Shown here one piece after another: positions 75 through 60,074 of a stretch of DNA of 64,000 bases; position 1 is the first letter of the stretch, and the number at the start of each line of letters is the position of its first letter. Position numbers and translations under genes: made by a program. Origin of the DNA: Heptranchias perlo (taxonomy: Eukaryota); assembly GCF_035084215.1 (NCBI RefSeq), contig NC_090351.1, positions 33,852,001-33,916,000 on the forward strand, in the 5' to 3' direction. A model generated the notes under the pieces. It did no database searches, was not told where the DNA came from, and was given only the letters and a program-made list of their open reading frames with translations.

Positions 75-122
75 TCATCTTGCCACGTTGGCCGACCTGT
101 GGTGATCTGATTCGTTGAGTAG
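75..122 (-). CDS. Gene A terminal exon, short cytoplasmic tail LLNESDHHRSANVAR*
   Basis: acceptor ttttcactttcag, phase 0, TGA at 75-77; conserved in genes B and C. Confidence 0.7.
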   Translation of the reverse strand, partial: LLNESDHHRSANVAR

Positions 123-12312: not shown

Positions 12313-12409
12313 TGAAGCTCGTCTCTGGACCGAGATTGCCCTCAGACCCGGCCGTATTTCCAGCACTTGGTTATTTTACACAGGGGAGGTCGACTCATTG
12401 GTCACCATC

Positions 12410-12633
12410 TGTCAGGAAGCACATCTTCACACAAAGACTGGTGGAAATCTGGAACTCTCTCCCCCAAAACGCTGTTGAGGCTGGGGGTCAGTTGAAAATT
12501 TCAAAACTGAGATTGATGAATTTTTGTTAGGTTCGGGCATTAAGGGATATGGAACCAAGGTGGGTAAATGGAGTTAAGATCAGCCCATGATCTAATTGAA
12601 TGGCAGGGCAGGACGACTCCTGTTCCTATGTTC
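12410..12633 (+). mobile_element. CR1 LINE 3' end (copy ~27200-27423)
   Basis: RKHIFTQRLVEIWNSLP motif, tail tgttcctatgttcc. Confidence 0.8.
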
Positions 12634-14959: not shown

Positions 14960-15007
14960 TCATCCTGCCACGTTGGCCGACCTGTGGTGATCTGATTCGT
15001 TGAGGAG
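14960..15007 (-). CDS. Gene B cytoplasmic exon LLNESDHHRSANVAG*
   Basis: paralogous to 75-122. Confidence 0.7.
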   Translation of the reverse strand, partial: LLNESDHHRSANVAG

Positions 15008-18000: not shown

Positions 18001-21000
18001 ATGGGAAGGGACCCTTGGACAGACTCACAGGAGACTGACACTGAGCCCCCAAAACATGAGGCACTTGGTGGTGATAAAAATCGAAGCACAGGAACAGACA
18101 CAGATTCTGTGGGAAAGAAACAAACATTCAGACACTGACTGACTCTGCTTCTTGCACTGGATCCAAACTATCCCTGATCTTTAATGGGATGAGAGAGATT
18201 AAATAGCCTTCAAAAGCACCTGAAAGAAGAGGAACAATTGTGCAAGTTTTTGCTTTTTTTGAAAAACAGCAGCATAATTGATCCAGATGGAAATAATCTT
18301 CTCATCATTTTTGCTTTGATGAAACCCATCATGAATTTGCCAGGTTGGAGCAGTCTATGGGGTAGAAATTGGGATGTGTTTTATTCCAATTCCGGGCGTA
18401 AAATGGTGCAACGTATACCAATTGCTGGGCGTGAAGTCCTGTGCCTGATTTGCATTGAGCCATGCCCACTGCCCTATTGGTCGACTCTATTTTTAGGCGT
18501 CCCTAGTGGTCGCCTGAAAGCAGCGTTGCATTAATTTAAATATGCAAAGAAGGGTCCTGGGCTTGTTTTAGCAAGCTTCTGCAAAATTTTTGAGAAACTA
18601 GGCAGAGCGTACACCGTGAATGTTCTGACTGGTTTACCCAGTTCTACAGTGGCCTAACCAGAGTTCCTTAAAGAGACCCATTGAGATCACTGAAGAATCG
18701 CGACTGCGCTCGGTCCCCCAGCGTTTTCCACCGGTGTCCAAGCAGGACGTTCCTGAGGGCCGCTGGTGAATAGACAGCAGGCTCAAATTTGATCCCCAAT
18801 GTTGGAAGTAGCCAGCAGCTCGCCTCTATTATCAAAATGAGGCCAATTTCAGATGAGCCTCAGGCCTCTGGCTTCTTGGGGAGCGCTTTCAGCCTGTCGC
18901 TTATTTTGGGCCCAGAAATGAGCCTAAAAGAATTTCCAACCCTATTGTTTTCAGGTGGGGGTTTGGTCGAATGTTGAATGCATTTCCAGGAATGGCCTGG
19001 CCCAGGTCCAGTTTGTACCAGAACTCCCTCATATGGGAATTCTGCAACCAACATCTAAAATTCAAATGCTTTCCAATTTTTATTTTACTTCTGAGACAAA
19101 ACCAGAATAAGCTTTCCTGTAACTCAGCCAGGCCCTGCCATTTTGGAACCTCACCAGCACATCTACATCTCCATGTCTCTCCATCCTGCGAGCAGCCTGA
19201 ACTACCATGTCTAATATCAGAACATAGCAGCGCTCCAGATCAGGAGAGCAGCAATGATACTGGGGATGTGTCAATTTGAAAATCAGGGCTAACAATTTCT
19301 CTCAGTAGTAGGTTACTAGCCTCCAATGCTGTTTAATTGTTTGACACTCGAACATGAGCTAGTTGGAGAAAGTCCGAGAAACCACAGCAGAATATGAGTG
19401 CAACAAATTGGAGATTTCTGCACATGTTTTGTGGATTTCGACAGGGAGAGTAATTGTGATTGGTTTCAGCGAACTGCAGCTGAAAAGGAACCCTTTATCT
19501 CAGTTTTATTGGAGTAGCCAAAGCACAAAGGTGACCAGCTTGACACTTTCAATGAGAATTGTCAGGTCTTCAGTGCTGTTGCGGCCACACCCTGTTCTCA
19601 GAAACTGATTGGGACAAAATTTGCTTTGTGACTGGACAGTCTCTCTTTGAAATGCTACTGCTTGCCAGCCTGTCCCTCAGCACTTCCCTACTCACCCACC
19701 CAGATCCATTGAAAAATCAATAGGAGGTGTAGAGGATGTAGAAGATTGTATTTAGTATTTGATCCATCAGGAGGTTTGCTTGGGAGGAAGATAATGGGCC
19801 ATAATTTGCTGTGGCAGAGCATCCAACGGTGTTTGCCGTTAGTTAGACTTGCCCTTGCTCGTTTAGTTTTCAAATTGTTTGCGGGTAAGTTACTGAAAGT
19901 GCGAGTTGATAACATCGCAGCGAGGGAAACAGGGCATCTGGGACCTGCGTGGACAGAGCAAGAAACCGTGTATCTCCTTCACCAGTCAGATTCAAGGATT
20001 TTGAAATAATCAATGCAAGGATTGAGAAGGAAGTGTAAATGAGAATGAATTGAATGTCCAATCAGGTACAGAAAGAGAAATAAAGAGAGGGAAAGAAGGA
20101 TTGGATGAAGAAAGAAAGAAAAAGGAAATGAAATTTTTTAAATTTCCAACTACAATTAAAACCTGAAGGATTGAAACTCCACACTTGTAAGTTTTCAGTG
20201 CCAAAGAGGTTGCTTGGCAGTAAATAACACTTATCACGTTGTTAAAAGGGTACTCAGACTTGAAATGACTTGACTCAACTTACTGTGGAGAGTTTAATTT
20301 GTATCTACCGTGCAAATACAGCAACTTCATGCCGTTCAATGTATTTCAATGGTGCGGCAGACAGCAAGATGCCCTTTTTGTGAAGCTAAGGGCAGAACGG
20401 TGCAACTTGGACAGCAACTTTTGGATTTCTGTGTTAACCAGGCATCTGCCCCTCGCCTGAATTTGCTGCACCATTTGCGTGTAAATAATGGCGATCGCCA
20501 TTAGTCTCACCGCTATTTTGACAGCAAAATCCGGCGCAACGTGACAACATGAATAAAGAGGCTTCTTTTACCATCAAGAGAGTGATCTAGCTTTTCAATT
20601 TTAAGTTTAGCTCGCTTGTAAAGTTGAACTGTATTGTGCTGAACTAAGTATCTGGTTGATTCTGTATGCCTCCCATCAGATCAGGAAACCTACAAAAATC
20701 TGTTACGCTCATGTGGATTGATTCCATTTTTAGTGTTTTCTAGGTATTTATCCCATTAAAGACTACTTGCTTCTTACTGCTTTTGTTATTGTCTTTCTAT
20801 TAGCTTTTAGCCTGAATGTAAACATCTGACAGTGTGAAATTTGATACAGTTCAGAGACAGGAAGATGTGTTGAGCATCCATGTGAGGTCTGGTGTAATAC
20901 ACTGTAGTTAAAGTAACTGTTGGTCCCATAATACGTGAAATTTTTGGTTGGATAGTTGGACAGGCCACGAATTGCGTGTGAGCAACACGAGTCGTATTTC

Positions 21001-23478
21001 CAGACCTCTGCCCACTTCCTGGAAGACTCTGCACTGCTGCGGAGCCTCGGAAAATCAGTGCTGTATTTTTCTTCCCAGATGAAACATTGAACAGACATTT
21101 TAGTCGTGTATAATAAAGTATATCACTGAGAAAAGTACCGTAAGATATTTGTAGCCATAAGTTAAACCTTGGATCGATGCCAGATTGTTCAATACCACAG
21201 CTGTACCATCCGCTATCTCCCGAGCGAAGATCGTTCATAGTAACAACGAATATTCCTTCTCTCTTGTTATCTGTGATTGACATTCTTCCTCGCTGTCCAT
21301 CTTGCTCACTTGTTTTTACTAAAACTGAACAATCACTAGTCCAGCCATGACACAAGTGTTTCACATATGACCGGTACGTATGTTTGTCATAGTGACAGTC
21401 TATTGTGATCGCTCTTCCCACAACTCCATTTACATTTTTTTTTGCCCACAATGCACCTGAAACTGAGGAGACAACACTTCAGAAATTGAACAGGAAGTAA
21501 CTGCTAAATACAAACAGATGCATTTTAATAAGAACTTCCACTGTGTACAGAAGAATCTCTCCACTACGTCCATTAATACAGTGAATTACTTTTGAAGTGT
21601 AGTCACTATCGTTGAACAAGAACAGCAACAACAGCTTGCATTTATATAGCACCTATAACATAGAAACACAAGCTAAGATATAATCAAAAGTAAATGGATA
21701 CTGAGCTAAGGCAGGAGATATTTGGAGAGGTGTGTAACAGCTTGGTCAAAGAGGTGGGTTTTATGGAGGGTCTTAAAGGAGGAGAGGTGGAGGATTTCAT
21801 ACAGGGAATTTCACAATGTGGTGCCAAGGTGGTTGAAGGCAAACCATTCCCACTAATGGTGGGGCAAAGGTAGGGATCGATGCACAAAAGATCACAGTCA
21901 GCGGAAGGGAGATTTCGTGAGGGAGTTGGTGCGTAGGGCTGGAGGAGGTTACTCAAATAGTGAGGGGCCATTTCATGAAGGGATTTAAACACAAGGATGA
22001 AAGTTTGAAGTTTTGAGAGACCGAGAGCCAATGTCGGTCAGCAAGGACAGGGGTGATGGATGAGCGGGACCTGAAACAGGCAGCAGAATTTTGGATGAGT
22101 TGATGTTTATGGTGGGTGCAAGAGGGGAGGCAGGCCAGGAGAACATTGGAATAGTTCAATCTGGAGGCAACAAAGACATGGATGTGGGTTTCAGCAGCAG
22201 ACGGGTGGAAGTATGCAGACTTTGTAATGAACTTGATATCTACAGGAAAAGTGCTCCAGATTGTCTGTAAGATCAATGAGCAAGACCTCGAGGATATTAA
22301 TCACAGGATTATTCCCAGTGTCACATGGTAATTACTATAAGAATAGTAAGATAAGAGAAGTAATTTTGTGACTGGAGAGATGGTTCAGAAGAAAAGGGTT
22401 CATATTCCTGGCACCTTGGGACCAGGTGTGGAAGAGGAGCATCCTGTAGAGGACGGGAGGAGTTTACTTGAACAGCGCCAAGACCAATGGCTTTGCTGGG
22501 AGAGGAACTGATGCTGTGGGCAAAGAGTTTACTCCCAAATGGCAGGAGGGTGGTTAAAAATAAGCTGAAGAGGCACGAGGAAGAGGACGGAGGGCTGAGG
22601 ATATAGGATAGATAAAAGAGGGAAATGGGGAGGGGAAAGAGAACAGTTCAGAAAGAGGAAGGTTTGAAAAGAGGAAGATTGCCATAACAGAGGCGTGCTT
22701 CAGTTGAATGTTCAAAAAGTATTCTGCATAAAATTGGCAAGTTGAGGCACAAATATTTATGGGGAGGTTTGATATAATAGAATTAACAGACTCATGGCTT
22801 AGAGTCGGGTGGGACTGGGAGTTTAACATTGCTGGTTACAAAATAGATTAGTCCAAAATGGTGGCGGGGAGGCAGTATTAATCAGAAATTCCATTACAGC
22901 ATTAAATCATAAAGATGATATGGGGCTGAATCTACTTGGTTGGAGTAAAAGAAGAAGAAGAAAACGGTTACTTATTGGGAGAGTAATATCGACCAAACAG
23001 TGGGCGTCCTCTCCCAGTGAGGAACAGTGTCACTGACTGAGCTTCGTTAAACAATATTTCATCGGCTGTACTTTAAATAACGAAAACAGTTGCAAATTTG
23101 TGACATTTTCTATTTGAGGGATTATAACTACTGCAGTCTTCAGTGTATATTGGACATCAGATTATATTATAAAAGTCACTTTTTACAGATTAAATCTGGT
23201 TTCCTTTGCATTTTGATTGTTACTTTTGCAGCTTTATTTTCCACTCACAATTAAGAATGCATTTTCGTCTGGTGAATAATACAGTGAAAAAGAGATACAA
23301 GACTATATGCAAATGTACTTTTGCTGAGTATTTTGTGCCTTTACATTTCTCCAAATATTTAAACATCTCTGCTGTTTAAACCATGCACGAGACTTAAACT
23401 AACACTGATTATCTGAATATCCAGCTCTGGCGGTCACTCACCGGGCAGGGAACAAATGAGAAGAATCAGAATCCGCAT
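14960..23478 (-). CDS. Gene B: V-C2 activating receptor paralogue, 315 aa predicted; V-domain core YW changed to HL
   Basis: Exons 23442-23478, 21139-21462, 17783-18106, 16873-16996, 15915-16005, 14960-15007; intact GT-AG sites and frame. Confidence 0.87.
15430..15850 (+). mobile_element. tRNA-derived SINE (duplicated copy)
   Basis: paralogue of 545-960. Confidence 0.8.
15915..16005 (-). CDS. Gene B TM exon (Arg)
   Basis: YIVWSVLRWVLFALLVICTVSVTTCTRKTK; donor gtaggg. Confidence 0.88.
16873..16996 (-). CDS. Gene B stalk exon
   Basis: GPVYTCEDFSTVSPKTTCSTSKNINSTDNRTTSSGSTSASK. Confidence 0.85.
17783..18106 (-). CDS. Gene B C2-domain exon
   Basis: overlaps ORF 17739..18101; same splice sites as gene A. 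Confidence 0.92.
21139..21462 (-). CDS. Gene B V-domain exon
   Basis: within ORF 20807..21451; KHLCHGWTSDC, DSGWYSCGI. Confidence 0.92.
23442..23478 (-). CDS. Gene B signal-peptide exon
   Basis: identical to gene A leader; donor gtgagt. Confidence 0.85.
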
Positions 23479-29400: not shown

Positions 29401-29748
29401 ACTTCGGCAAATCCTTTACAAATGCAGACAGAGGAATATATAATCTGAAAAATTGACACAAAAAGTGTGACAAAAATGTATCAACAGGAAATCAGGTTGT
29501 GCAGACAGAAAGTGGCCACAGACATAAATTTTTAACACGATGTAGATAGATAGAAAAATAGCCACCAATTCGAAGCACGCAGCCATCATTTTAGTTTTGA
29601 TTTTTTTCTCCACTAATTTAATAGTCAAGTTCATTTAATGACCAATTCCATTTTTTATGTACATTTGGTGAAAAGGGAAAGCTGGATGAACAATGAATAT
29701 TTGATCAGGACACAAAATTCCATCAAGGTAGATGCAATCAGGAAATCT

Positions 29749-29796
29749 TCATCTTGCCACGTTGGCCGACCTGTGGTGATCTGATTCGTTGAGGAG
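29749..29796 (-). CDS. Gene C cytoplasmic exon
   Basis: LLNESDHHRSANVAR*. Confidence 0.7.
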   Translation of the reverse strand, partial: LLNESDHHRSANVAR

Positions 29797-32700
29797 CTGA
29801 AAGTGAAAATATTTAATGCATCAGATTCATTGATATTGAGAAGTTTGCGTTATTTTACATGTCAGTTCTGAACAGAATTCTATCTGAAACTGTTAACAAG
29901 TTGAGGAAAGGCCTGCGATAGACTGGAGCTGTGTTGAGATCACACTCCTCCCTCCCCCATCACCATTGCACGTGTGCTGGGAAAAGGTGTCAGTTGTGCC
30001 CCTTTTGCTGGAACACCATTTTCTCACATTCAACATGGGTTTTTCTGCAACCGTGACGGTGGACAGTTGACATCAGAAAACGGTTGACTTTATTAAATAT
30101 ATTTTAGATAGTCCAGTTGAGGTTCCCAGCAACAATAGAATTAGGTCTGTGTCTGAGCACCCTGGTGCTCGACTGGATAAACAAATCAGAATGGAATCTT
30201 TTCTTGACTGTATTAGTACAGCTTGGCTCAGTGGTAGCACTCTCATTTCAGATGTCAAAAGGTTGTGGGTTCAAGTCCCAGTCCAGGGACTTCAGCACAT
30301 AATCTAGGCTGGCACTTCAGCACTGTGCTGAGGGAGTGCTCTATTGTCAGATGAAACGTTAATGGAGGGCCCCATCTGTTTGTTCAGGTGGACAGAAAAG
30401 ATTCCATGACACTATTTGAAGAAGAGCAAAGGAGTTCACCCAATATTCTGGCCAAAACAGATTATCCAGTCATTTATCTATCTCATCTGCTGTGTTTGGG
30501 ACCTTTCTGTGTGCAAATTGTCTGCCACTTTTGTCTCCATAACAACAATAACACTTCAAAAGTAATTCATTGGATGCAAAGAGATTGGGACGTCTTGAGG
30601 ATATAAAAGAGTCTATATAAACGCAGGTTCTTTCTTTATTATATCTGTGACAAATATTTTTGAAAGAATTTTTGGAGTGTTTCATACAGTCCTTAATCCC
30701 TACCTTAGTTTTTCTCGTACACGTTGTGACTGAAACAGTACAAATCACCAGGAGAGCAAAGAGCACCCAGCGTAGCACACTCCACACAATGTAACTGAGC
30801 AAAAGGGGAGAAATACAAAATCATTCACAAGAAACGGGACTGCTTTGTGTTTTAAACATTTATCTCCTGTTTACACTGTAATCTTAGTATTTTGTATCAA
30901 TGTAAAGCAGCAGAACCAAGGGACTTTAGCTGGGAAACTAAACTAGTGTTTGACTTATGGAGGAAAGTCAACTTTGTGATCATTAGATAAAGGCCAAATG
31001 AAGCAAAGTTCATGAACATGTCCACAATGTGTAGCTATAAAGGCAAGGCACAATTTTATAATTGAGAACTTTATAAAAGTGACTGACCCTCTGCCTGGGG
31101 CCATGTAGCAGTGGTAATATGTCTCCTCAGGGATGATCACAATAACATCAACCTACAACTGCTCATCTGCACCTTCTTTCAGGCAATTGCTGAGCAGCTG
31201 GAAACAGTCAACCTTCCCGTTCTCTCAGTTTGGAAACAGTGTATAACATGGGTAAACTGAAAAGGTGAAAATGACGGAGAATGCAAATGCCACTCCAGAA
31301 TAGTGGAAGGCAAAACCAGCATTGCTGGGGTTTGGCAAGTACAACTCATCTCACGCCATGAGACGAGGTTTGGGGTGAAGTCATCATGGTGAATAATGCA
31401 AACAGCACCACCTGAGGGGTGGCAAAATGGAGGTGCTTATTTCTTATTCTTATTTTCCACCGACAAAAATAGCACCTTTGTTCGGAAGCTAACACAACAG
31501 CATGATGTAAATCCAGCCACCATTTCCATTATGATCAGTTATAGTCTGGAACAGTAAATATTTGTGAACCCTTGTGCCAAATTTCTTAAAGAACATTTAT
31601 TTTCTCAGATGCAAACAGTGCCAATCAAAACACAAGCAATGAGAACATTGTACCTTTTACTGGCAGATGTGGATCCTGAAGATGTGGTTTGATTATCAGT
31701 GGAATTGATATTTTTACTTGTGGAACATGTGGTTTTTGGTGATACTGTTGAAAATTCTTCACAAGTATATACAGGTCCTATTGAGGCAAGGGAATAAAGT
31801 TTAGATTCATCAGATTCTCACTTGTAGTCAACCATGAGAACACTACTCTTAAATGGAACCTCAGTGCTTGGAGTAAAATCCTGGTTGGTATATTGGATTT
31901 GGATGCTTTCATTTCTGTGCAATTTCCCCTCTCTGGTAGCAAGGAGAGATGCTGCTAACACCTGGCAGCGGCCCAATTTTATTGATATATCAGTTATTTC
32001 CCCATATCCAAGTGTTTGCAGTACAGAATTACTATTGGGACAGTTAAAGGTATCGGGTTGGTGGGACTCCAAACCAGATATTCCCTTTTTTGCCCCACGC
32101 AAACGTAAAGGAAAGTTAGAGCCAGGGAATGATCTCTGCCACCACCGGAAAGTGTATTCCTGGGCGCCTAGCAACCACGATGCTGCCCTGGAGCGATGTC
32201 CTCAGTGGAATAGGAACATCAGCAGTGCATTGAGCACATCGGGAAATATTGGACCAATAATTACTGTTGTCGATATTAGTAGACAAGCAGTTAAAATTCG
32301 TAAGGCGTTCCTCGTTTAAAAGAATGTTTCATTCAAAATAGCAGATAAAGGAATGTCAAACGCACACATTAAACAGTCGCCTGCTAATATTGACAACGGT
32401 CAATTCTAGCCTCTTGGGGTCGGTTTCCTGAGCTTGCCAAGTGATGGGAAACCTCAGCCACCAGGAGTGGATATCGCAAATCAGGGACAGGCTCGCAAAC
32501 AGATGCAATAGATATTAGTTTTAAAAATTCAGTTCCCATATTGTTTGTTTAAAGTAACACTTACCAATGCTGCTGATTCGAGCCACATAACTGCAGTTTT
32601 TCTCTGATCTGTTCAAGAGTGACACGTCAACCATTTCACTGGATTTTCCTCCATTATTATTTGAGGCTCTGCAGTAATATTGATGATGATCTTGGGTGAA

Positions 32701-35700
32701 GGAAGAACATTGTAGATCCAGTTTATCAGTGTCAGAGATGGTTAAATCTTCAGACGTGGCCTTTTTATACCATGTGTACCAAATGGGAAGGGACCCTTGG
32801 ACAGACTCACAGGAGACTGACACTGAGCCCCCAAAACATGAGGCATTTGCTGGTGATAAAAATCGAAGTACAGGAACAGACACAGATTCTGTGGGAAAGA
32901 AACAAACATTCAGACACTGACTGACTCTGCTTCTTGCACTGGATCCAAACTATCCCTGATCTTTAATGGGATGAGAGAGATTAAATAACTTTCAAAAGCA
33001 CCTGAAAGAAGAGGAACAATTGAGAAAGTTTTTGCTTTTTTTGAAAAAAAGCAGCATAATTGATCCAGATGGAAATAATCTTCCCATCATTTTTGCTTTG
33101 ATGAAAACCATCATGAATTTGCCAGGTTGGAGCAGTCTATGTGCTAGAAATTGGGATGTGTTTTGTTCCAATTCCGGGCGTAAAATGGTGCAACGTATAC
33201 CAATTGCTGGGCGTGAAGTCCTGTGCCTGATTTGCATTGGGGCATGCCCACTGCCCTATTGGTCGACACTATTTTTAGGCGTCCCTAGTGGTCGCCTGAA
33301 AGCAGCGTTGCTTTAATTTAAATATGCAAAGAACGGTCCTGGGCTTGTTTTAGCAAGCTTCTGCAAAATTTGTCAGAAACTAGGCAGAGCATACACCGAA
33401 TGATCTGACTGGTTTACCCAGTTCTACAGCGGCCTAACCAGAATTCCTTGAAGAGACCCGTGGAGATCACTGAAGAATCGCGACTGCGCTCGGTCCTCCA
33501 GCGTTTTCCTCCGGTGTCCAAGCAGGACGTTCCTGAGGGCCGCTGGTGAATAGACAGCAGCCTCAAATTTGATCCCCAATGTCGGCAGTAGCCAGCAGCT
33601 CGCCTCTATTATCGAAATGAGGCCAATTTCAGATGACCCTTAGGCCTCTGGCTTCTTGGGGCGCGCTTTCAGCCTGTCGCTTATTTTGGGCCCAGAAATG
33701 AGCCTAAAATAATTTCCAACCCTATTGTTTTCAGGTGGTTTGGTTGAATGTTGAATGCATTTCCAGAAATGGCCTGGCCCAGGTCCAGTTCGTACCAGAA
33801 CTCCCTCATATGGGAATTCTGCAACAAACATCAAAAAATCAAATGCTTTCCAATTTTCATTTGACTTCCGTGACAAAACGAGAATAAGCTTTCCTGCAAC
33901 TCAACCAGGCCCTGCCATTTTGGAACCTCACCAGCACATCTACATCTCCATGTCTCTCCATCCTGCGAGCAGCCTGAACTACCATGTCTAATATCAGAAC
34001 ATAGCAGGGCTCCAGATCAGGAGAGCAGCAATGATACTGGGGATGAGTCAATGTGAAAATCAGGGCTAACAATTTCTCTCTGTAGCAGGTTACCAGCCTC
34101 CAATGCTGTTTAATTGTTTGACACTCGAACATGAACTGGTTGGAGAAGGTCCGAGAAACCACAGCAGAATATGAATGCAAAAAATTGGAGATTTCTGTGT
34201 ATGTTTTGTGGCTTTAGACAGGGAGAGTAATTGTGACTGATTTCATCTAACCGCAGCTGAAAAGGAACTCTTTATCTCAATGTCAAGGGAGTAGCCAAAG
34301 CACAGAGGTGACCAGATTGACATTTTCAATGAGAATTGTCAGGCCTTCAGTGCTGTTGCTGCCACACCCTGTTCTCAGAAACTGATGAGGACAAAATTTG
34401 CTTGGTGACTGGACAGTCTCTCTTTGAAATGCTTATTCTTGCCAGCCTGTCCCTGAGCACTTTTCTACTCACCCACCCAAAATCAACAGGACGTGTAAAG
34501 GACGTAGGAGACTGTATTTAATATTCGATCCATCAGGAGGTTTGCTTGGGAAGAAGTAAATGGGCCATAATTTGCTGTGGCAGAGCATCTAACGACGTCT
34601 GGCGTTAGTTAGACTTGTCCTTGCTCGTTTAGGTTTCAAATTGTTTGTGGGGTAAGTTGCTGATAGTGTGAGCTGATAACGTCGCAGCGAGGGAAACAGG
34701 GCACCTGGGACCTGAGTGAACGGAGCAAGCAACCGTGTATCTCCCAGTCAGATTGAAGGATTGTGAAATAAACAGCACAAGGACTGAGAAAGAAGTGTAA
34801 ATGAGAGTGGGTGAATTCAATGTCCAATCAGATACAGAAAGAGAAATAAAGAGAGGGAAGGAAAGATTGGATTAAGAGAGAGAGAGAAAGGAAAAGTACA
34901 TTTTAAAATCTGCTTGCTCCGTTCACTCAGGTACCAGATGCCCTGTTTCCCTCGCTGCCACGTTATCAGCTCGCACTATCAGCAACTTACCCCAGAAACA
35001 ATTTGAAACCTAAACGAGCAAGGACAAGTCTAACCAACGGCAGACACCGTTGGATGCTCTGCCACAGCAAATTATGGCCCATTATCTTCCTCCCAAGCAA
35101 ACCTCCTGATGGATCAAATATTAAATAGTCTCCTACATCCTCTACACTCCTCTTGATTTTGGGTGGGTGAGAGAGGTTGCTTGGCAGTAATTAACACTTA
35201 TCACATTGTTAAAAGGGAACTTAGACTTGAAATGACTTGACTCAACTTTCTCTGTTGTGTTTAATTCGTATCTACCGTGCAAATACAGCAACTTCACACT
35301 GTTCAATGTATTTCAATGGTGAGGCACACAGTGAGATGCCCTTTTCGCAAAGCTAATGACAGAACGGTGCAACTCGGACAGCAACTTTTGGATGTTTGAG
35401 TTTAACCGCGTATCTGCCCCTCGCCTGATGTTGCTGCACCATTTGTGCATAAATAACGGCGAGCGCCATTAGTCTCATCGCTATTTGACAGTAAAATCTG
35501 GCCCAATGTGTCAACATTAATAAAGAGGCTTCTTTTGCCTTCAATGGAGTTTTCTAGGTTTTCAATTTTAGTTTAGCTCGCTTATAAATTTGAACTCCAT
35601 TACGCTGGCATAAGAAGCTCGCTGATTCTGTATGCCTCCCATCATATCAGGAAACATACAAAAATCTGTTACGCTCTTGTGGATTGATTCCATTTTTGGT

Positions 35701-38700
35701 GTTTTCTAGCCATTTATCCCATTAATGAACACTTGCTTCTTACTGCTTTTGTTCTTGTCTGTCCATTAGTTTTAGCCTGAATGTAAACATCTGACAGTGT
35801 GACATTTGATACAGTTCAGAGACAGGAAGATGTGTTGAGCATCCATGTGAGGTCTGGTGTAATACACTGTAGTTAAAGTAACTGTTGGTCCCATAATACG
35901 TGAAATTTTTGGTTGGATAGTTGGACAGGCCACGAATTGCGTGTGAGCAACACAAGTCGTATTTCCAGACCTCTGCCCACTTCCTGGAAGACTCTGCACT
36001 GCTGCGGAACCTCGGAAAATCAGTGCTGTATTTTTCTTCCTCGACAAAACTATGAACAGACATTTTAGTCGTGTATAATAAAGTATATCACTGAGAAAAG
36101 TACCGTAAGATATTTGTAGCCGTAAAGCAAACAATGGATCGTAGCCAGATTGTTCAATACCACAGCTGTACCATCCTCTATCTCCCGAGTGAAGATCCTT
36201 CATAGTAACAACGAATATTCCTTCTGTCTTGTTATCTGTGATTGACATTCTTCCTCGCTGTCCATCTTGCTCATTTGTTTTTACTAAAACTGAACAACTT
36301 CTAGACCAGCCATGACACCAATATTTCACATATGACCAGTACATATGTTTGTCATAGTAACAGTCTATTGTGATCGCTCTTCCCACAACTCCTGTTACAT
36401 TTTTTTTTGCGCACAATGCACCTGAAAGTGAAGAGACAACACTTCAGAAACAAAAACAGCAACAACAGCTTGCATTTCTAGAGCACCTATAACATAGAAA
36501 AACAAGCTAAGACATCATAAAAAATAAATGGACACTGAGCTAAGGCAGGAGATATTAGGAGAGGTGTGTAACAGCTTGGTCAAAGAGGTGGGTTTTTGTG
36601 GAGGGTCTTAAAGGAGGAGAGGTGGAGGATTTCATACAGGGAATTTCACAATGTGGCACCAAGGTGGTTGAAGGCACACCCATTCCCACTAATGGTGGGG
36701 CAAAGGTAGGGGGACAATGCACAAAAGACCACAGTCAGAGAAACAGAGAGTTCGGAAGGGTGAGTAGGGCTGCAGGGGGTTATATATCTAGGGAGGGGCC
36801 ATGTCATGAAGGGATTTAAACATAAGGATGAGAATTTTAAATCGGAAGTGTTCAGAGACCGAGAGCCAATGTAGGTCAGCAAGGACAGGGGTGACAGATG
36901 AGCGGGACCTGAAACGGGCAGCAGAATTTTGGATGAGTTGATGTTTATGGTGAGTGTAAGAGGGGAGGCAGGCCAGGAGAACATTGGAATAGTTCAATCT
37001 GGAGGCAACAAAGACATGGATGTGGGTTTCAGCAGCAGACGGGTGGAGGCGTGCAATGTTACGGAGGTGGAAGTAGGCAGACTTTGTAATGAACTTGATA
37101 TCTGCAGGAAATGAGCTACAGATTGTCTGTAAGATCAATGAGCAAGACCTCGAGGGTATTAATCACAGGATTATTCCCAGTGCCACATGGTAATCAGTAT
37201 AAGAATAGTAAGATAAGGGAAGTAATTTTGTGACTGGAGAGATGGTTTAGAAGCTCATAGGATCGAGGGAAAAGTACGGACTTGGTTAGGAAATTGGCTG
37301 AGCGAAAGGCGACAGAGAGTAGGGATAATGGGTAATTATTCACATTGGCAGGATGTGACTAGTGGAGATCTGTTTGGGGCCTCAATTATTCACAATATTT
37401 ATTAACGACTTAGATGAAGGCATAGAAAGTCTCATATCTAAGTTTGCCGATGACACAAAGATTGGTGGCATTGTAAGCAGTGTAGATGGAAACATAAAAT
37501 TACAAAGCGATATTGATAGATTAGGTGAATGGGCAAAACTGTGGCAAATGGAATTCAATGTAGACAAATGTGAGGTCATCCACTTTGGATTAAAAAAGGA
37601 TAGAACAGGGTACTTTCTAAATGGTAAAAAGTTTAAAACAGTGGATGTCCAAAGGGACTTAAGGGTTCAGGTGCATAGATCATTGAAGTGTCATGAACAG
37701 GTGCAGAAAATAATCAATAAGGCTAATGGAATGCTGGCCTTTATATCTAGAGGACTGGAGTACAAGGGGGCAGAAGTTATGCTGCAGCTATACAAAACCC
37801 TAATTAGACAGCACCTGGAGTACTGTGAGCAGTTCTGGGCACCGCACCTTCGGAAGGACATGTTAGCCTTGGAGGGAGTGCAGCGTAGGTTTACTAGAAT
37901 GATACCCGGACTTCAAGGATTAAGTTACGAGGAGAGATTACACAAATTGGGGTTGTATTCTCTAGAGTTTAGAAGGTTAAGGGGTGATCTGATCGAAGTT
38001 TATAAGATATTAAGGGGAACAGATAGGGTGGATAGAGAGAAACTATTTCCGCTGGTTGGGGATTCTAGGAGTAGGGGCACAGTCTAAAAATTAGAGCCAG
38101 ATCTTTCAGGAGAGAGATTAGAAAACATTTCTACAAACTAAGGGTGGTAGAAGTTTGGAACTCTCTTCCGCAGACGGCAATTGATACTAGCTCAATTGCT
38201 AAATTTAAATCTGCGATAGATAGGTTTTTGGCAACCAAAGGTATTAAGGGATATGGGCCAAAGGCAGGTATATGGAGCTAGATCACAGATCAGCCATGAT
38301 CTTATCAAATGGCGGAGCAGGCACGAGGGGCTGAATGGCCGACTTATGTTCCTATGTTCCTAAGAAAAGGGTTCAGATTCCTGGCAGTTTGGGATCAGGT
38401 CTGGAAGAGGAGCATCCTGTAGAGAACGGGAGGACTTTACTTGAACAGCAGTTAAGATTTGTATGGCATTCCTCGTTTAAAAGAATGTTTCTGTTGAAAT
38501 GTCAGATAAAGGAACGTCATGCACACATTAAACAGTTGACTGCTAATATTGACAACGGTCAATTCCAACCTCTTGGGGACACTTTTCTGAGCTTGCAGAA
38601 GTGATGGGAAACCTCAGACACCAGGAGTGGATATCACATATTAGGGACAGGCTCGCAAACAGATGGAATAGACATTAGTTTTAAAAATTCAGTTACCATA

Positions 38701-41700
38701 TTGTTTGTTTAAAGTAACACTTACCAATGCTGCTGATTTGATTCACATAACTGCAGTTTTTCTCTGATCTGTTGAAGTCTGACAATTTAAACATTTCACT
38801 GGATTTTCCTCCATTATTATTTGAGGCTCGACAGTAATATTGATGATGGTGTTGGGCGAAGGAAGGACAATATAGATCCAGTTGATTGGTGTCAGAGATC
38901 ATTAAATCTTCAGACGTGGCCTTTTTATACCATGTGTACCGAATGGGAAGGGACCCTTGGGCAGACTCACAGGAGACTGACACTGAGCCCCCAAAACATG
39001 AGGCATTTGGTGGTGATAAAAATCGAAGTACAGGAACAGACACAGATTCTGTGGGAAAGAAACAAACATTCAGACACTGACTGACTCTGCTTCTTGCATT
39101 GGATCCAAACTATCCCTGATCTTTAATGGGATCAGAGAGATTAAATAACTTTCAAAAGCACCTGAAAGAAGAGGAACAATTGAGAAAGTTTCTTTTTTTT
39201 TAAAACAGCAGCATAATTGATCCAGATGGAAATAATCGTCTCATCATTTTTGCTTTGATGAAACCCATCATGAATTTGCCAGGTTGGAGCAGTCTATGTG
39301 CTAGAAATTGGTATGTGTTTTGTTCCATTTCTGGGCGTAAAATGGTGCAACGCATACCAATTGCTGGGCGTGAAGTCCTGTGCCCGATTTGCATTGGGGC
39401 ATGCCCGCCGCCATATTGGTCGACTCTGTTTTTAGGCGTCCCTAATGGTCGCCTGAAAGCAGCGTTGCATTAATTAAAAATGCAAACAAGGGTCTTGGGC
39501 TTGTTTTAGGAAACTTCTGCAAAATTTTTGAGAAACTAGGTGGAGCGTACACCGTGAATGATCTGACTGGTTTACCCAGCTCTACAGCGGCCTAACCAGA
39601 GTTCCTTAAAGAGACCCATTGAGATCACTGAAGAATCGCGACTGCGCTCGGTCCTCCAGCGTTTTCCTCCGGTGTCCAAGCAGGACGTTCCTGAGGGCCG
39701 CTGGTGAATAGACAGCAGGCTCAAATTAAATCCCCGATGTCGGCAGTAGCCAGCAGCTCGCCTCTATTATCAAAATGAGGCCAATTTCAGATGAGCCTCA
39801 GGCCTCTGGCTTCTTGGGGCGCGCTTTCAGCCTGTCGCTTATTTTGGGCCCAGAAATGAGCCTAAAATAATTTCCACCCCTATTGTTTTCAGGTGGGGGT
39901 TTGGTCGAATGTTGAATGCATTTCCAGGAATGGCCTGGCCCAGGTCCAGTTTGTAACAGAACTCACTAATATGGGAATTCTGCAACCAACATCGAAAAAT
40001 CAAATGCTTTCCAATTTTCATTTGACTTCCGTGACAAAACCAGAATAAGCTTTCCTGTAACTCAGCCAGGCCCTGCCATTTTGGAACCTCACCAGCACAT
40101 CTACATCTCCATGTCTCTCCATCCTGCGAGCAGCCTGAACTACCATGTCTAATATCAGAACATAGCAGGGCTCCAGATCAGGAGAGCAGCAATGATACTG
40201 GGGATGAGTCAATTTGAAAATCAGGGCTAACAATTTCTCTCAGTAGTAGGTTACCAGCCTCCAATGCTGTTTAATTGTTTGACACTCGAACATGAGCTAG
40301 TTGGAGAAAGTCCGAGAAACACAGCAGAATATGAGTGCAAAAAATTGGAGATTTCTGCAAATGTTTTGTGGATTTAGACAGGGAGAGTAATTGTGATTGG
40401 TTTCAGCTAACTGCAGCTAAAAAGGAACCCTTTATCACTGTGTCAAGAGAATAGCCAAAGCACAAAGGTGACCAGATTGACATTTTCAATGAGAATTGTC
40501 AGGCCTTCAGTGCTGTTGCTGCCACACCCTGTTCTCAGAAACTGATGAGGACAAAATTTGCTTGGTGACTGGACAGTCTCTCTTTGAAATGCTACTGCTT
40601 GCCGACCTGTCCCTGAGCACTTCCCTACTCACCCACCCAGATCCATTGAAAAATCAACAGGTCATGTGGAGGATATAGGAGATTGTATTTAATATCAGGA
40701 GGTTTGATTGGGAGGAAGATAATGGGCCATAATTTGCTTTGCAGGGCATCTAATGGCGTCTGCCGTTAGTTCGACTTGCCCTTGCTCGTTTAGGTTTCAA
40801 ATTGTTTGCGGGTATGTATCTACCGTGCAAATACAGCAACTTCATGCCGTTGAATGTATTTCGATGGTGCGGCAGACAGCAAGATGCCCTTTTTCTGAAG
40901 CTAAGGGCAGAACGGCGTAACTTGGACAGCAACTTTTGGATTTCTGCGTTTAACCAGGCATCTGCCTGAATTTGCTGCACCATTTGCGCATAAATAATGG
41001 TGAGCGTCATTAGTCTCACCGCTATTTTGGCAGTAAAATCTGGCCCAACGTGACAACATGAATAAAGAGGCTTCTTTTACCATCAAGAGAGTGATCTAGC
41101 TTTTCAATTTTAGTTTAGCTCGCTTGTAAAGTTGAACTGTATTGTGCTGACCTAAGTATCTGGTTGATTCTGTATGCCTCCCATCATATCAGGAAACCTA
41201 CAAAAATCTGTTATGCTCTTGTGGATTGATTCCATTTTTGGTGTTTTCTCGGCATTTATCCCATTAATGACTATTTGCTTCTTACTGCTTTTGTTATTGT
41301 CTTTCTATTAGTTTTAGCCTGAATGTAAACATCTGACAGTGTGAAATTTGATACAGTTCAGACATAGGAAGATGTGTTGAGCATCCATGTGAGGTCTGGT
41401 GTAATACACTGTCGTTAAAGTAACTGTTGGTCCCATAATACGTGAATTTTTTGGTTGGATAGTTGGACAGGCCACGAATTGCGTGTGAGCAACGCGAGTC
41501 GTGTTTCCAGACCTCTGCCCACTTCCTGGAAGACTCTGCACTGCTGCGGAGCCTCGGAAAATCAGTGCTGTATTTTTCTTCCCCGATGAAACATTGAACA
41601 GACATTTTAGTCGTGTATAATAAAGTATATCACTGAGAAAAGTACCGTAAGATATTTGTAGTCGTAAGTTAAACCTTGGATCGATGCCAAGTTGTTCAAT

Positions 41701-44098
41701 ACCACAGCTGTACCATCCTGTATCTCCCGAGCGAAGATCCTTCATAGTAACAACGAATATTCCTTCTCTCTTGTTATCTGTGATTGACATTCTTCCTCGC
41801 TGTCCATCTTGCTCACTTGTTTTTACTAAAACTGAACATTCAGTAGTCCAGCCATGACACCAATATTTCACATATGACCGGTACGTATGTTTGTCATAGT
41901 GACAGTCTATTGTGATCGCTCTTCCCACAACACCTCTGACATTTTTTTTTGCCCACAATGCACCTGAAACTGAGGAGACAACACTTCAGAAATTGAACAG
42001 GAAGTAACTGCTAAATACAAACAGATACATTTTAATAAGAACTTCCACTGTGTACAGAAGAATCTCTCCACTACGTCCATTAATACAGTTGAATTCCTTG
42101 TAGTTTGTGATGAAAGAAAGAACATTAATTTCGTGCCTTATCACATCCTCACGATGTCCTAAAGCACTTCCCAGCCAGTGAATTACTTTTGAAGTGTAGT
42201 CACTATCGTTAAACAAGAACAGCAACAACAGCTTGCATTTATATAACACCGATAACATAGAAACACAAGCTAAGATATAATCAAAAGTAAATGGACACTG
42301 AGCTAAGGCAGGAGATATTAGGAGAGGTGTGTAACAGCTTGGTCAAAGAGGTGGGTTTTAAAGAGGACCTTAAAGGAGGAGAGGTGGAGGATTTCATACA
42401 GGGAATTTCACAATGTGGTCAAAGGCACACCCATTCCCACTAATGGTGGGGCAAAGGTAGGGATCGATGCACAAAAGACCACAGTCAGAGGAACGGATAG
42501 TTCGTGAGGGGGGGTGGTGAGTCGGGCTGAAGGAGGTTACTCAAATAGTGACGGGCCATGTCATGAAGGAATTTAAAGGATGAGAGTTTTAGATATGACA
42601 TGTTGAGTGACCGAGAGCCAATGTAGGTCAGCAAGGACAGGGGTGATAGATGAGCGGGACCTGAAACGGGCAGCAGAATTTTGGATGAGTTGATGTTTAT
42701 GGTGGGTGCAAGAGGGGAGGCAGGCCAGGAGAACATTGGAATAGTTCAATCTGGAGGCAACAAAGACATGGATGTGGATTTCAGCAGCAGACGGGTGGAA
42801 GTAGGCAGACTTTGTGATGAACTTGATATCTGCAGGAAAAGTGCTCCAGATTGTCTGTAAGATCAATGAGCAAGACCTCGAGGGTATTAATCACAGGATT
42901 ATTCCCAGTGCCACATGGTAATCAGTATAAGAATAGTAAGATAAGAGAAATAATTTTCTGACTGGAGCGATGGTTCAGAAGAAAAGGGTTCATATTCCTG
43001 GCACCTTGGGACCAGGTGTGGAAGAGGAGCATCCTGTAGAGGACGGGAGGAGTTTACTTGAACAGCACCAAGACCAATGGCCTTGCTGGGAGAGGAACTG
43101 ATGCTGTGGGCAAAGAGTTTACTCCCAAATGGCAGGAGGGTGGTTAAAAATAAGCTGAAGAGGCACGAGGAAGAGGACGGAGGGCTAAGGATATAGGTTA
43201 GATAAAAGAGGGAAAGAGAACAGATCAGAAAGAGGAAGGATTGAAAAGAGGAAGATTGCCATAACAGAGGCATGCTTCAGTTGAATGTTCATAAAGTGTT
43301 CTGCATAAAATTGGGAAGTTGAGGCGCAAATATTTATGGGGAGGTTTGATGTAATAGAATTAAGAGACTCATGGCTTAGAGTCGGGTGGGACTGGGAGTT
43401 TAACATTGCTGGTTACAAAATAGATTAGTCCAAAATGGTGGAGGGGAGGCAGTATTAATGAAAAATGCCATTACAGCACTAAATCATAAAGATGATATGG
43501 GGCTGAATCTACTTGGTTAGAGTTAAAGAAGAAGAAGAAAACGGTTACTTATTGGGAGAGTAATATCGACCAAACAGTGGGCGTCCTCTCCCAGTGAGAA
43601 ACAGTGTCACTGACAGAGCCTCGTTAAACAATATTTCATCGGCTGTACTTTAAATAACAAAAACAGTTGCAAATTTGTGACATTTTCTATTTGAGGGATT
43701 ATTACCACTGCAGTCTTCAGTGTATATTGGACATCAGATTATATTATAAAAGTCACTTTTTACAGATTAAAACTGGTTGCCTTTGCATTTTGTTTGTTAC
43801 TTTTGCAGCTTTTAAAAAAATTAAATGGAACCTTTATTTTCCACTCACAATTAAGAATGCATCTTCGTATATATTGATAAATATTTGTCTGGTAAATAAT
43901 ACTGTCAAAAAGAGATATAAGACTATATGCAAATGTACTTTTGCTGAGTATTTTGTGCCTTTACATTTCTCCAAATATTTAAACATTTCTCCTGTTTAAA
44001 CCATACACGAGACTTAAACTAACACTGATTATCTGAATATCCAGCTCTGGCAGTCACTCACCGGGCAGGCAACAAATGAGAAGAATCAGAATCTGCAT
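29749..44098 (-). CDS. Gene C: four-Ig-domain V-C2-V-C2 activating receptor, 529 aa predicted
   Basis: Exons 44062-44098, 41646-41969, 38725-39048, 36104-36421, 32565-32888, 31654-31777, 30704-30794, 29749-29796. One leader and one stalk/TM/tail serve two V-C2 cassettes; all Ig exons are phase 1-1 and open. Confidence 0.78.
30219..30640 (+). mobile_element. tRNA-derived SINE (duplicated copy)
   Basis: paralogue of 545-960. Confidence 0.8.
30704..30794 (-). CDS. Gene C TM exon (Arg)
   Basis: same sequence as gene B TM exon. Confidence 0.88.
31654..31777 (-). CDS. Gene C stalk exon
   Basis: GPVYTCEEFSTVSPKTTCSTSKNINSTDNQTTSS... Confidence 0.85.
32565..32888 (-). CDS. Gene C C2 domain 2
   Basis: overlaps ORF 32521..32883. 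Confidence 0.92.
34468..35171. repeat. ~262-bp inverted duplication (34468-34731 vs 34911-35171)
   Basis: right arm is the reverse complement of the left arm; absent from the other cassette copies. Confidence 0.9.
36104..36421 (-). CDS. Gene C V domain 2 (internal, leaderless)
   Basis: overlaps ORF 35772..36416; acceptor cactttcag; 318 nt, phase 1-1; begins GALCAKK. Confidence 0.85.
37254..38361 (+). mobile_element. 5'-truncated CR1 LINE, specific to gene C
   Basis: RT ORF 37362..38087 (KFADDTK, HLEYCEQFWAP); (TATGTTCC)n tail; empty site cagaagaaaaggg in the other copies; AAG duplicated. Confidence 0.92.
38725..39048 (-). CDS. Gene C C2 domain 1
   Basis: overlaps ORF 38693..39043; intact acceptor and donor gtaagt. 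Confidence 0.9.
41646..41969 (-). CDS. Gene C V domain 1
   Basis: overlaps ORF 41314..41958; KYWCHGWTTEC, DTGWYSC. Confidence 0.92.
44062..44098 (-). CDS. Gene C signal-peptide exon MQILILLICCLP
   Basis: ATG at 44098, donor gtgagt. Confidence 0.85.
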
Positions 44099-49004: not shown

Positions 49005-49452
49005 AGGCCATGGATCAGTGGTAGCACGCTCACTCTGTGTCAGAAGGTTCTGGGTTCATGTCCCACTCCAGAAACTTGAGCACATAATCTAGGCTGACAC
49101 TCCAGTGCAGTACTGAGGGAGTGCTGCACTGTCAGAGGTGCCATCTTTTGGATGAGATGTTAAACCGATTGCCCTCTCAGGTGGACGTAAAATATTCCAG
49201 GGCACTATTTTGAAGAAGAGTAGGTTAGTTCTCCCCAGTGTCCTGGTCAATATTTATCCTTCAACCAGCGTCACTAACACAGATTATCTGGTCATTATCT
49301 CATTGTTGTTTGTGGAACTTTGCTGTGCACAAATTGGCTGCCACGTTTCCTACATTACAACAGTGATACACTTCAATATTACTTCATTGGTTGTAAAGCG
49401 CTTTGGGACGTCCTGAGGTCATGAAAGGCATTAAATGCAAGTTCTTTCTTTC
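49005..49452 (+). mobile_element. tRNA-derived SINE, full length
   Basis: same family as 545-960. Confidence 0.8.
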
Positions 49453-59800: not shown

Positions 59801-60074
59801 CTAAGAAGATATTTCAGGAATTAGATATTAATTGATTTCTTAATGTATGCCAATATCTTGTCAATTGATAAGTCGGTCTATAATATTAAATATCTTGCGT
59901 CTACTTGTGCCACTTGTTTGTCACATTTACGTCCTGTTGTTACACTTCTACTGTAACAATTTGTTGATTGGCTTAAAGTAGAACAGCAGCAAATAAGAAT
60001 TGAGAAAGTAGGAAATGATTGAATGAAAGCAAGATGAGTGGCTAGAAAAATGCCAGTGAGTATCCAGTAAGGAG

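What the first reader, a model, noticed from the sequence alone, without database searches (positions are those of the whole stretch)
29749..44098. Four-domain V-C2-V-C2 receptor born from an intronic fusion junction
Seen: at ~38447-38450, leader-V intron sequence (..TTTACTTGAACAGCA, equivalent to ~7665/43067) joins directly to C2-stalk intron sequence (AGCAGTTAA.., equivalent to ~2610) over a 4-bp AGCA microhomology. No stalk, TM, tail, promoter or leader lies between the two V-C2 cassettes. All Ig exons are phase 1-1, so splicing gives a 529-aa in-frame protein. Inference: either a ~9.8-kb deletion fused two tandem genes or a ~5-kb intragenic duplication occurred. This is exon shuffling with its breakpoint preserved.
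Basis: partly seen in the sequence, partly recalled or inferred. Interest (0 to 1): 0.85.

Follow-up and report, generated by a model that had tools for sequence, protein, structure and literature searches.

The report
Shark four-Ig receptor gene with preserved fusion point
A sevengill-shark immune receptor gene really does carry two V-C2 exon pairs joined at a still-readable breakpoint inside an intron, but the gene is already annotated and its four-domain layout has been known in this receptor family (skate MDIR5) since 2006.

Summary
The window holds three copies of a ~14.9-kb tandem unit, each an Ig receptor gene on the minus strand. In the third copy, leader-V intron sequence (unit ~7665) abuts C2-stalk intron sequence (unit ~2608) at 38447-38450, over AGC(A). 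No leader, stalk or TM exon lies between. A 411-nt short-read DNA contig crosses the junction without a mismatch.

All four Ig exons are intact and phase 1-1. They match, residue for residue, a RefSeq protein of 529 aa ("polymeric immunoglobulin receptor-like", Heptranchias perlo). RNA-like contigs cover the inner exons and show the V to C2(B) splice. The key C2(B) to V(A) splice was not seen directly.

The gene belongs to the MDIR family. It aligns end to end (54% identity) with skate MDIR5, which is also V-C2-V-C2 with a TM arginine and a short tail. V-C2-V-C2 models occur across sharks, rays and chimaera.

Deletion versus duplication cannot be settled. The inner exons V(A) and C2(B) branch first among H. 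perlo copies, while the outer halves resemble neighbouring units, which points to gene conversion.

Verdict: a real and tidy case of exon shuffling, a new member of a known kind, of modest interest.

The parts
44062..44098 (-). Leader exon of the c3 gene (MQILILLICCLP plus 1 base, phase 1; donor GTGAGT)
   Evidence: Sequence read. The translation is an exact substring of P0166 at residue 1.
41646..41969 (-). V(B) exon, a CD300/pIgR-type V-set domain. There are two acceptors 6 nt apart (41969 as used in RefSeq, or 41963).
   Evidence: Pfam V-set 6.9e-12. PDB pIgR 5e-39 and CD300LF 5e-20. Exact match to P0166 residues 16-120. RNA-like contig at 41708-41768.
38725..39048 (-). C2(B) exon, an FCRL-like C2/Ig_3 domain and one of the two inner exons
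   Evidence: Pfam Ig_3/Ig_2. PDB FCRL5 3.6e-33 summed over 6 domains. Exact match to P0166 residues 122-228. RNA-like contigs at 38941-39040, and a loose end at 39049 that reads as the V exon 3' end, i.e. the V->C2(B) splice.
38447..38450 (.). Breakpoint microhomology AGCA. To the left is leader-V intron (unit ~7665); to the right is C2-stalk intron (unit ~2608).
   Evidence: DNA contig 38315-38725 with no mismatches.
37253..38363 (.). A 1.1-kb repeat (TE) insertion private to copy A, 84 bp left of the breakpoint
   Evidence: The empty site is seen in c1, c2 and B. Contig depth is 10^5-10^6 in DNA and very high in the RNA-like runs. It matches 53956-54588 in inverted orientation at 68%.
36104..36421 (-). 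V(A) exon, the other inner exon. Only the downstream acceptor survives (upstream cag has become cac), and it carries a W->C change (ALCAKK).
   Evidence: Pfam V-set 2.6e-9. Exact match to P0166 residues 230-334. RNA-like depth falls in bin 36000-36199 only.
32565..32888 (-). C2(A) exon
   Evidence: Exact match to P0166 residues 336-442.
31654..31777 (-). Stalk exon (phase 1 in, phase 2 out)
   Evidence: It agrees with P0166.
30704..30794 (-). Transmembrane exon, YIVWSVLRWVLFALLVICTVSV, with an Arg in the membrane span
   Evidence: The Arg aligns with the Arg in the skate MDIR5 TM.
29749..29796 (-). Last coding exon, LLNESDHHRSANVAR plus a TGA stop (short tail, no tyrosine motif)
   Evidence: It matches the P0166 C-terminus.
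32286..38446 (.). Copy A of the doubled segment (unit 2608-7665, plus the TE insertion, minus a 220-bp private deletion)
38447..43067 (.). Copy B of the doubled segment (unit 2608-7665, lacking unit 4994-5405)
75..8690 (-). Complete two-domain paralogue c1 (leader, V, C2, stalk, TM with Arg, tail all intact)
14960..23478 (-). Complete two-domain paralogue c2

Best explanation
The region 29749-44098 (minus strand) is a real gene of the sevengill shark Heptranchias perlo. It belongs to the MDIR family (modular domain immune-type receptors) and sits at the edge of a tandem array of two-domain paralogues. Its eight coding exons are leader, V, C2, V, C2, stalk, TM and tail. A non-homologous join with 3-4 bp of microhomology linked a leader-V intron to a C2-stalk intron. 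Because every Ig exon is phase 1-1, the second V-C2 pair splices in frame. The product is a type I membrane protein with four Ig domains, an arginine in the membrane span and a 15-residue tail. This is the activating form, and I infer that it signals through an ITAM adaptor. ITIM-tailed paralogues are its inhibitory partners. The join is old: the inner piece, V(A) plus junction plus C2(B), is the most diverged part. The outer halves have been kept similar to neighbouring units by gene conversion or unequal exchange. Shown here: the junction, the exon structure, DNA support, family membership and the V->C2(B) splice. Inferred: use of the C2(B)->V(A) splice (present in the RefSeq model only), adaptor coupling, and the conversion history.
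For: A DNA contig crosses the join. Splice sites and phases were read. All five tested exon translations are exact substrings of RefSeq P0166, 529 aa. In run X5, coverage outside the repeat stretches lies only in bins that contain the three Ig exons, and a loose end shows V spliced to C2(B) at 39048. The inner exons stay open despite about 9% divergence. A simulation gives P(no stop) of about 0.20 and 0.21. Local intron indel rates give P(no indel) of about 0.13 and 0.38. The joint probability is about 0.002. dN/dS for the inner exons is 1.4-3.3. P0166 aligns colinearly with skate MDIR5 at 54% over 528 aa, including the TM Arg. V(A) and C2(B) are basal in the H. perlo clades. An AU test rejects V(A)+V(B) as sisters (p=0.007). 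The identity pattern along the unit is mosaic.
Against: No contig showing the 38725->36421 joint was listed. RNA contigs are 60-65 nt and patchy, and the V(A) signal lies in a bin that also holds 104 nt of intron. All reads come from the same individual as the assembly, so population frequency and zygosity are unknown. RefSeq models of this array also chain cassettes of separate complete genes (P0154), so a Gnomon model alone is weak proof of a splice. dN/dS above 1 rests on only 2-5 synonymous differences.
Confidence: 0.8

Rival explanations
1. Origin by deletion. A ~9.8-kb deletion removed the leader, promoter and upstream region of one unit, together with the stalk, TM and tail of the next unit. 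This fused two tandem genes that had already diverged.
For: V(A) and V(B) are not sisters: V(B) nests with c1, c2 and the ITIM gene, and the AU test gives p=0.007. A and B are only 87-92% alike, whereas c1 and c2 are 97% alike. B-right and the right flank show the same identity to c1 (95-98%), and A-left and the left flank also match each other in this respect.
Against: Without later exchange, V(A) and C2(A) should share one history, and so should V(B) and C2(B). Instead V(A) and C2(B) are both basal, while C2(A) and V(B) are both nested. Conversion has to be invoked here as well.
Confidence: 0.4
2. Origin by duplication. A ~5-kb segment (unit 2608-7665) was tandemly duplicated inside one gene. 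The outer halves were later overwritten by exchange with neighbouring units.
For: The junction geometry is identical under this model. Sisterhood of C2(A) and C2(B) is not rejected (AU p=0.13). Recent exchange in the array is directly visible: c2 and c3 are 99.4-99.8% identical over unit 1-2000, where c1 and c2 are only 95-98%. The inner piece has no colinear partner in two-domain units, so it would escape homogenisation, as observed.
Against: Sisterhood of V(A) and V(B) is rejected. Near the junction, private substitutions are strongly asymmetric (B 44 versus A 5 in unit 2608-3107; A 26-32 versus B 7-9 in unit 5608-6607). This is unexpected for simple duplicates.
Confidence: 0.4
3. The four-domain form is ancestral. 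c3 descends from an old V-C2-V-C2 gene like batoid MDIR5, and the two-domain units c1 and c2 arose from it by recombination between A and B, which dropped the inner piece.
For: c1 and c2 resemble A on the C2 side and B on the V side, exactly as an A/B crossover product would. The inner exons are basal to all other H. perlo copies. Four-domain members exist in all chondrichthyan lineages sampled.
Against: All H. perlo V and C2 domains form single clades and do not pair with the d1 and d3 classes of batoids or lamniforms. The hybrid intron is still 90-97% identical to the leader-V and C2-stalk introns of the two-domain units. Ordinary concerted evolution explains the same pattern.
Confidence: 0.12
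4. The inner exons are dead weight. The gene makes only two-domain proteins by skipping one cassette, or the join is an assembly error.
For: The 38725->36421 joint was not seen in contigs. dN/dS is at or above 1, and the inner exons are as diverged as the introns.
Against: A DNA contig crosses the join without a mismatch. Depth from the RNA-like runs falls on C2(B) and at V(A), and V is spliced to C2(B). Open frames without indels are unlikely under neutrality, at about 0.002. All Cys and Trp landmarks are kept.
Confidence: 0.08

Closest known systems
MDIR5 (modular domain immune-type receptor 5) of the clearnose skate, Rostroraja eglanteria (P0208). The family was described by Cannon et al. 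2006, Immunogenetics 58:362, as cited in PMC3031540.
   Same: It has the same layout from end to end: leader, V, C2, V, C2, stalk, a TM with Arg, and a short tail. Identity is 54% over 528 aligned residues, and the Pfam content is the same.
   Different: In MDIR5 the two cassettes are old. Its d1 and d3 V domains fall in separate batoid-wide clades. In the shark gene both cassettes belong to one species-level clade, and about 5 kb of intron is still 87-92% alike between them, so the doubling is a separate and younger event. I could not read the 2006 paper.
4Ig-B7-H3 (CD276) of humans and some other mammals
   Same: An IgV-IgC exon pair was duplicated in tandem inside a gene, giving V-C-V-C from V-C. 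The abstract of PMC3172298 reports the 4Ig form in several mammalian species.
   Different: It belongs to a different Ig family (B7) and a different kind of constant-type domain, and it is a ligand rather than an adaptor-coupled receptor. I did not compare the breakpoints.
CD300 / CMRF35-like molecules and pIgR
   Same: The V domain is of this type: CD300LF 5e-20 and pIgR 5e-39 summed. It has four Cys and the YWC motif that PMC3031540 describes for CD300. RefSeq names the gene 'pIgR-like'.
   Different: CD300 proteins have a single V domain, and pIgR has only V-type domains plus a long sorting tail. Here V alternates with an FCRL-like C2 domain, and the tail is 15 residues long.
Ly9/SLAMF3 and CD4/LAG-3 (from general knowledge; not tested here)
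   Same: These are V-C2-V-C2 ectodomains thought to derive from doubling of a V-C2 pair.
   Different: They are unrelated subfamilies, the events are ancient, and no breakpoint can be recognised.

Membership tests
MDIR (modular domain immune-type receptors, cartilaginous fish) | V-set domain of the CD300/pIgR/TREM type with two disulfides (four Cys, YWC motif) | tested here: met
   Pfam V-set for both V exons. PDB hits to pIgR, CD300LF and NKp44. Four Cys in every copy.
MDIR (modular domain immune-type receptors, cartilaginous fish) | A second, C2/I-type domain alternating with V in a variable number of modules | tested here: met
   Ig_3/Ig_2 hits. The domain map is V-C-V-C for P0166, MDIR5 and 20+ relatives, V-V-C-V-C for MDIR3 and V-C for MDIR2.
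MDIR (modular domain immune-type receptors, cartilaginous fish) | Full-length sequence similarity to a named MDIR | tested here: met
   P0166 against MDIR5: 54% identity, colinear over 528 aa. A search with the paralogue P0152 gave MDIR3 at 7.5e-187, MDIR5 at 2.8e-152 and MDIR2 at 3.8e-94.
MDIR (modular domain immune-type receptors, cartilaginous fish) | Paired activating forms (charged TM residue, short tail) and inhibitory forms (ITIM tail) within a multigene cluster | tested here: met
   c1, c2 and c3 each have a TM Arg and a 15-aa tail. The ITIM-type paralogue P0021 lies on the same 42.9-Mb record and its V domain is 98% identical to that of c1. The tandem array is shown.
MDIR (modular domain immune-type receptors, cartilaginous fish) | Expression in immune cells and signalling through an adaptor | not testable with these tools
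   Only exon-limited coverage in RNA-like contigs from an unnamed tissue is available.
Polymeric immunoglobulin receptor (the RefSeq name is 'pIgR-like') | Ectodomain built only of V-type domains (two in teleosts, five in mammals) | tested here: not met
   Domains 2 and 4 are Ig_3/Ig_2 and FCRL5-like, not V-set.
Polymeric immunoglobulin receptor (the RefSeq name is 'pIgR-like') | Long cytoplasmic tail with sorting and transcytosis signals, and no charged TM residue | tested here: not met
   The tail is LLNESDHHRSANVAR (15 aa) and the TM contains an Arg.
CD300 / CMRF35-like | A single V domain followed by a stalk | tested here: not met
   There are four Ig domains. Only the V domain is homologous.
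FCRL | Ectodomain of C2-type domains only | tested here: not met
   The C2 exons resemble FCRL5 domains, but domains 1 and 3 are V-set.

The most novel reading that the evidence does not exclude
Units of this array may also be combined at the RNA level. RefSeq models chain the V-C2 exons of separate, complete neighbouring genes: P0154 joins c2, c1 and a further unit, and P0152 (isoform X3) joins one unit to the ITIM gene. If read-through transcription with C2-to-V cassette splicing is real, the array would produce (V-C2)n receptors of variable length on either activating or inhibitory tails. The c3 junction would then be a version of such a transcript hard-wired into the genome.
Probability: 0.12. 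Interest if true: 0.6.

Novelty: new member of a known kind. Interest (0 to 1): 0.3.

Why it matters
This is a clear, base-resolved example of how Ig-superfamily receptors gain domains. Two introns were joined by a microhomology repair event, and phase-1-1 exons did the rest. It also shows that in a tandem array under concerted evolution, the part of a fused gene that lacks a colinear partner drifts away while the rest stays homogenised. That makes it useful for teaching and for dating events in MDIR arrays. It does not reveal a new architecture, family or mechanism. The gene is already in RefSeq, and the V-C2-V-C2 activating form is known from skate cDNA.

Tried and rejected
- **Assembly error:** rejected, because a DNA contig crosses the join.
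- **Ortholog of batoid MDIR5 cassettes:** the domain trees place all H. perlo domains in one clade, so I treat the doubling as lineage-specific. Concerted evolution could mask an older origin.
- **Deletion versus duplication:** I tried sliding identities, site patterns, rooted domain trees and AU tests. Both simple models fail and both work once conversion is allowed, so the question stays open.
- **MDIR literature:** the 2006 MDIR paper and a 2010 review are not held.
- **Read-through ORF after the V exon:** it has no Pfam hit.
- **ITIM exon remnants:** a tblastn search found none in the window.
- **Joined exon model:** Searches ran exon by exon, and the only full-length sequence used was the database's own record P0166.
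Full report
**Layout**

Self-comparison of the window shows a tandem unit of 14,885 bp. Copy c1 spans 1-14885, c2 spans 14886-29674, and c3 starts at 29675. c1 and c2 are 97.3% identical. Inside c3, unit positions 2608-7665 occur twice in a row. Copy A is 32286-38446 and copy B is 38447-43067. After B the sequence continues colinear with the unit up to about unit 9534 (window 44918). A and B are 87-92% identical over roughly 4.4 kb of aligned sequence, most of it intron.

**The junction**

Base-level alignments show that '...GGACTTTACTTGAACAGC' left of 38450 is the leader-V intron (c1 ~7665, B ~43067). 'AGCAGTTAAGATTTG...' from 38447 is the C2-stalk intron (c1 ~2608). The overlap is AGCA, or AGC if the parent carried the G seen in c1 and c2.

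Copy A also carries three private changes:
- a 1,111-bp repeat insertion at 37253-38363, 84 bp from the join;
- a private 220-bp deletion;
- B, in turn, lacks unit 4994-5405.

**Is the junction in the DNA?**

One DNA run and three RNA-like runs from the sample that holds the stretch were laid on 36000-41999 at 98% likeness or better. In DNA run X1, a 411-nt contig at depth 25 covers 38315-38725 with no mismatch or gap. Its depth equals that of neighbouring unique contigs (23-27). The join is therefore not an artefact of long-read assembly. It is the same individual, however, so frequency and zygosity remain unknown.

**Gene structure**

All genes lie on the minus strand. The c3 exons, as read from the sequence, are:

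| Exon | Coordinates | Notes |
|---|---|---|
| Leader | 44062-44098 | |
| V(B) | 41646-41969 (or -41963) | two acceptors 6 nt apart |
| C2(B) | 38725-39048 | |
| V(A) | 36104-36421 | |
| C2(A) | 32565-32888 | |
| Stalk | 31654-31777 | |
| TM | 30704-30794 | YIVWSVLRWVLFALLVICTVSV |
| Tail | 29749-29796 | LLNESDHHRSANVAR, then stop |

All four Ig exons are phase 1-1 with AG/GT sites. The C2(B) donor is a consensus G|GTAAGT. By homology the leader, stalk, TM and tail exons lie outside unit 2608-7665, so none sits between the cassettes. c1 and c2 are complete two-domain genes with all exons intact.

**Identity of the gene**

I searched exon by exon and did not build a joined model myself.
- The V exons are Pfam V-set (6.9e-12 and 2.6e-9). 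They match solved pIgR (5e-39 summed) and CD300LF (5e-20).
- The C2 exons are Ig_3/Ig_2 and match FCRL5 domains (3.6e-33 summed over six).
- A library-wide HMMER search with V(B), followed by name look-ups, pointed to Heptranchias perlo.
- A word search with the database protein P0152 returned P0166, 'polymeric immunoglobulin receptor-like [Heptranchias perlo]', 529 aa.

The leader, V(B), C2(B), V(A) and C2(A) translations are exact substrings of P0166, in that order. Its stalk, TM and tail equal my reading of those exons. The gene and its 529-aa product are therefore already annotated.

**Family**

The same search returned MDIR2, MDIR3 and MDIR5 of the clearnose skate. PMC3031540 cites this family as modular domain immune-type receptors related to CD300, TREM, FCAR and pIgR. 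I could not obtain the primary paper.

P0166 aligns end to end with MDIR5 at 54% identity over 528 residues, including the TM arginine and the short tail. Domain mapping of 34 relatives shows V-C2-V-C2 in sharks, skates, rays and the chimaera Callorhinchus. The architecture is therefore a standard form of this family. The RefSeq label 'pIgR-like' fails the pIgR tests, because the protein has C2 domains, a 15-aa tail and a TM Arg.

**Expression**

In run X5, depth outside the repeat-derived stretches (36800-36999 and 37200-38399) falls only in bins that contain exons:
- C2(B): depth 230 and 112;
- V(B): depth 147;
- bin 36000-36199: depth 52. This bin holds the last 96 nt of V(A) plus 104 nt of intron.

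Runs X6 and X7 add only weak depth, at C2(B) and at 40800-40999 respectively.

A loose end at 39049 reads, on the RNA strand, AATATCTTAC followed by the C2(B) exon. This is the V exon 3' end spliced to the predicted acceptor. X5 is therefore RNA, and the V->C2(B) splice is shown. No listed contig shows 38725->36421. The contigs are 60-65 nt and patchy, so that splice rests on the RefSeq model only.

**Are the inner exons under constraint?**

V(A) and C2(B) differ from c1 by 28 and 30 substitutions, yet they keep open frames, all Cys and Trp landmarks, and have no indels. A simulation gives P(no stop) of 0.20 and 0.21. Local intron indel densities (13 per 2065 bp and 7 per 2361 bp) give P(no indel) of about 0.13 and 0.38. 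The joint probability is about 0.002. dN/dS is 2.5-3.3 for V(A) and 1.4-1.9 for C2(B) against c1 and c2, on few synonymous changes. This pattern fits coding exons under diversifying selection better than decaying exons.

**History of the junction**

Identity along the unit is mosaic:
- On the C2 side (unit 2487-3485), A is 96.4-97.4% identical to c1 and c2, whereas B is 89-94%.
- On the V side (unit 5283-7261), B is 93-97% identical to c1 and c2, whereas A is 85-94%.
- Private substitutions mirror this: B 44 versus A 5 in the first 500 bp right of the join, and A 26-32 versus B 7-9 around the V exon.

Rooted domain trees place V(A) basal to all other H. perlo V domains (98/95) and C2(B) basal to all other C2 domains (98/91). 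All H. perlo domains form one clade, apart from the batoid and lamniform d1/d3 classes. AU tests reject V(A)+V(B) as sisters (p=0.007) but do not reject C2(A)+C2(B) (p=0.13).

Recent exchange between units is visible directly: c2 and c3 are 99.4-99.8% identical over unit 1-2000, where c1 and c2 are 95-98%.

Taken together, the join is old relative to the last homogenisation of the array. The inner piece has no colinear partner in two-domain units and has drifted. The outer halves were overwritten. Both the deletion model and the duplication model need this overlay, and once it is allowed neither is favoured. A third reading, in which the two-domain units arose by A/B recombination from a four-domain ancestor, fits the mosaic but is less parsimonious.

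**Comparison with known cases and verdict**

Doubling of a V-C exon pair inside an Ig-superfamily gene is documented for B7-H3 (PMC3172298). From general knowledge it is also inferred for Ly9 and for CD4/LAG-3. Within the MDIR family it has clearly happened more than once.

What is specific here is the legible breakpoint.

**Limits of this analysis**

- The exon-joined model was never assembled or searched by me. Only the database record P0166 was used as a whole protein.

Noticed in passing
window 2888-3208, 6243-6557, 17784-18104, 21140-21454 (c1 and c2 Ig exons): RefSeq model P0154 (760 aa, partial) chains V-C2 of c2, V-C2 of c1 and a third cassette left of the window. Yet c1 and c2 each have intact leader, stalk, TM and tail exons. 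This is either cross-unit read-through splicing or a gene-model chaining artefact. P0152 (isoform X3) and P0156 look similar.
   Followed up: partly
window 41317-41645, 35775-36103, 20810-21138, 5913-6241 (minus strand, just past the V-exon donors): In all four V copies the reading frame stays open for 109 codons beyond the donor. The 329 nt have no indels and diverge by only about 4% between c1 and A, against 8.8% in the exon. pN/pS is 0.13-1.0 (below 0.65 in every pair except c1/c2). There is no Pfam hit and no RNA depth over the B copy. It could be a conserved intronic element or an alternative V-only tail.
   Followed up: partly
window 57944-58270 and 59451-59807 (minus strand); also ~49011-49451: A fifth, more distant family member lies here. 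Its V and C2 exons are 54-56% identical in protein to the ITIM paralogue P0021, and its V-C2 intron is only about 1.2 kb.
   Followed up: no
window 41963-41971 and 36421-36430: V exons have tandem acceptors 6 nt apart (…CAG|TTTCAG|G), which add or omit Val-Ser. RefSeq isoforms of 418 and 416 aa show both in use. In the internal V(A) the upstream AG is lost (cag->cac) and Trp has become Cys (ALCAKK).
   Followed up: partly
window 37253-38363: A 1.1-kb repeat element is inserted only in copy A. It ends in the '...GGCTGAATGGCC...TTCCTAA' tail, and contig depth in both DNA and RNA-like runs is extremely high. A diverged inverted copy lies at 53956-54588.
   Followed up: no
window 1-2000 versus 14886-16885 versus 29675-31674: The 3' parts (tail, TM, stalk) of c2 and c3 are 99.4-99.8% identical, while c1 and c2 are 95-98% there. 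This indicates a very recent conversion or crossover tract between neighbouring units.
   Followed up: partly
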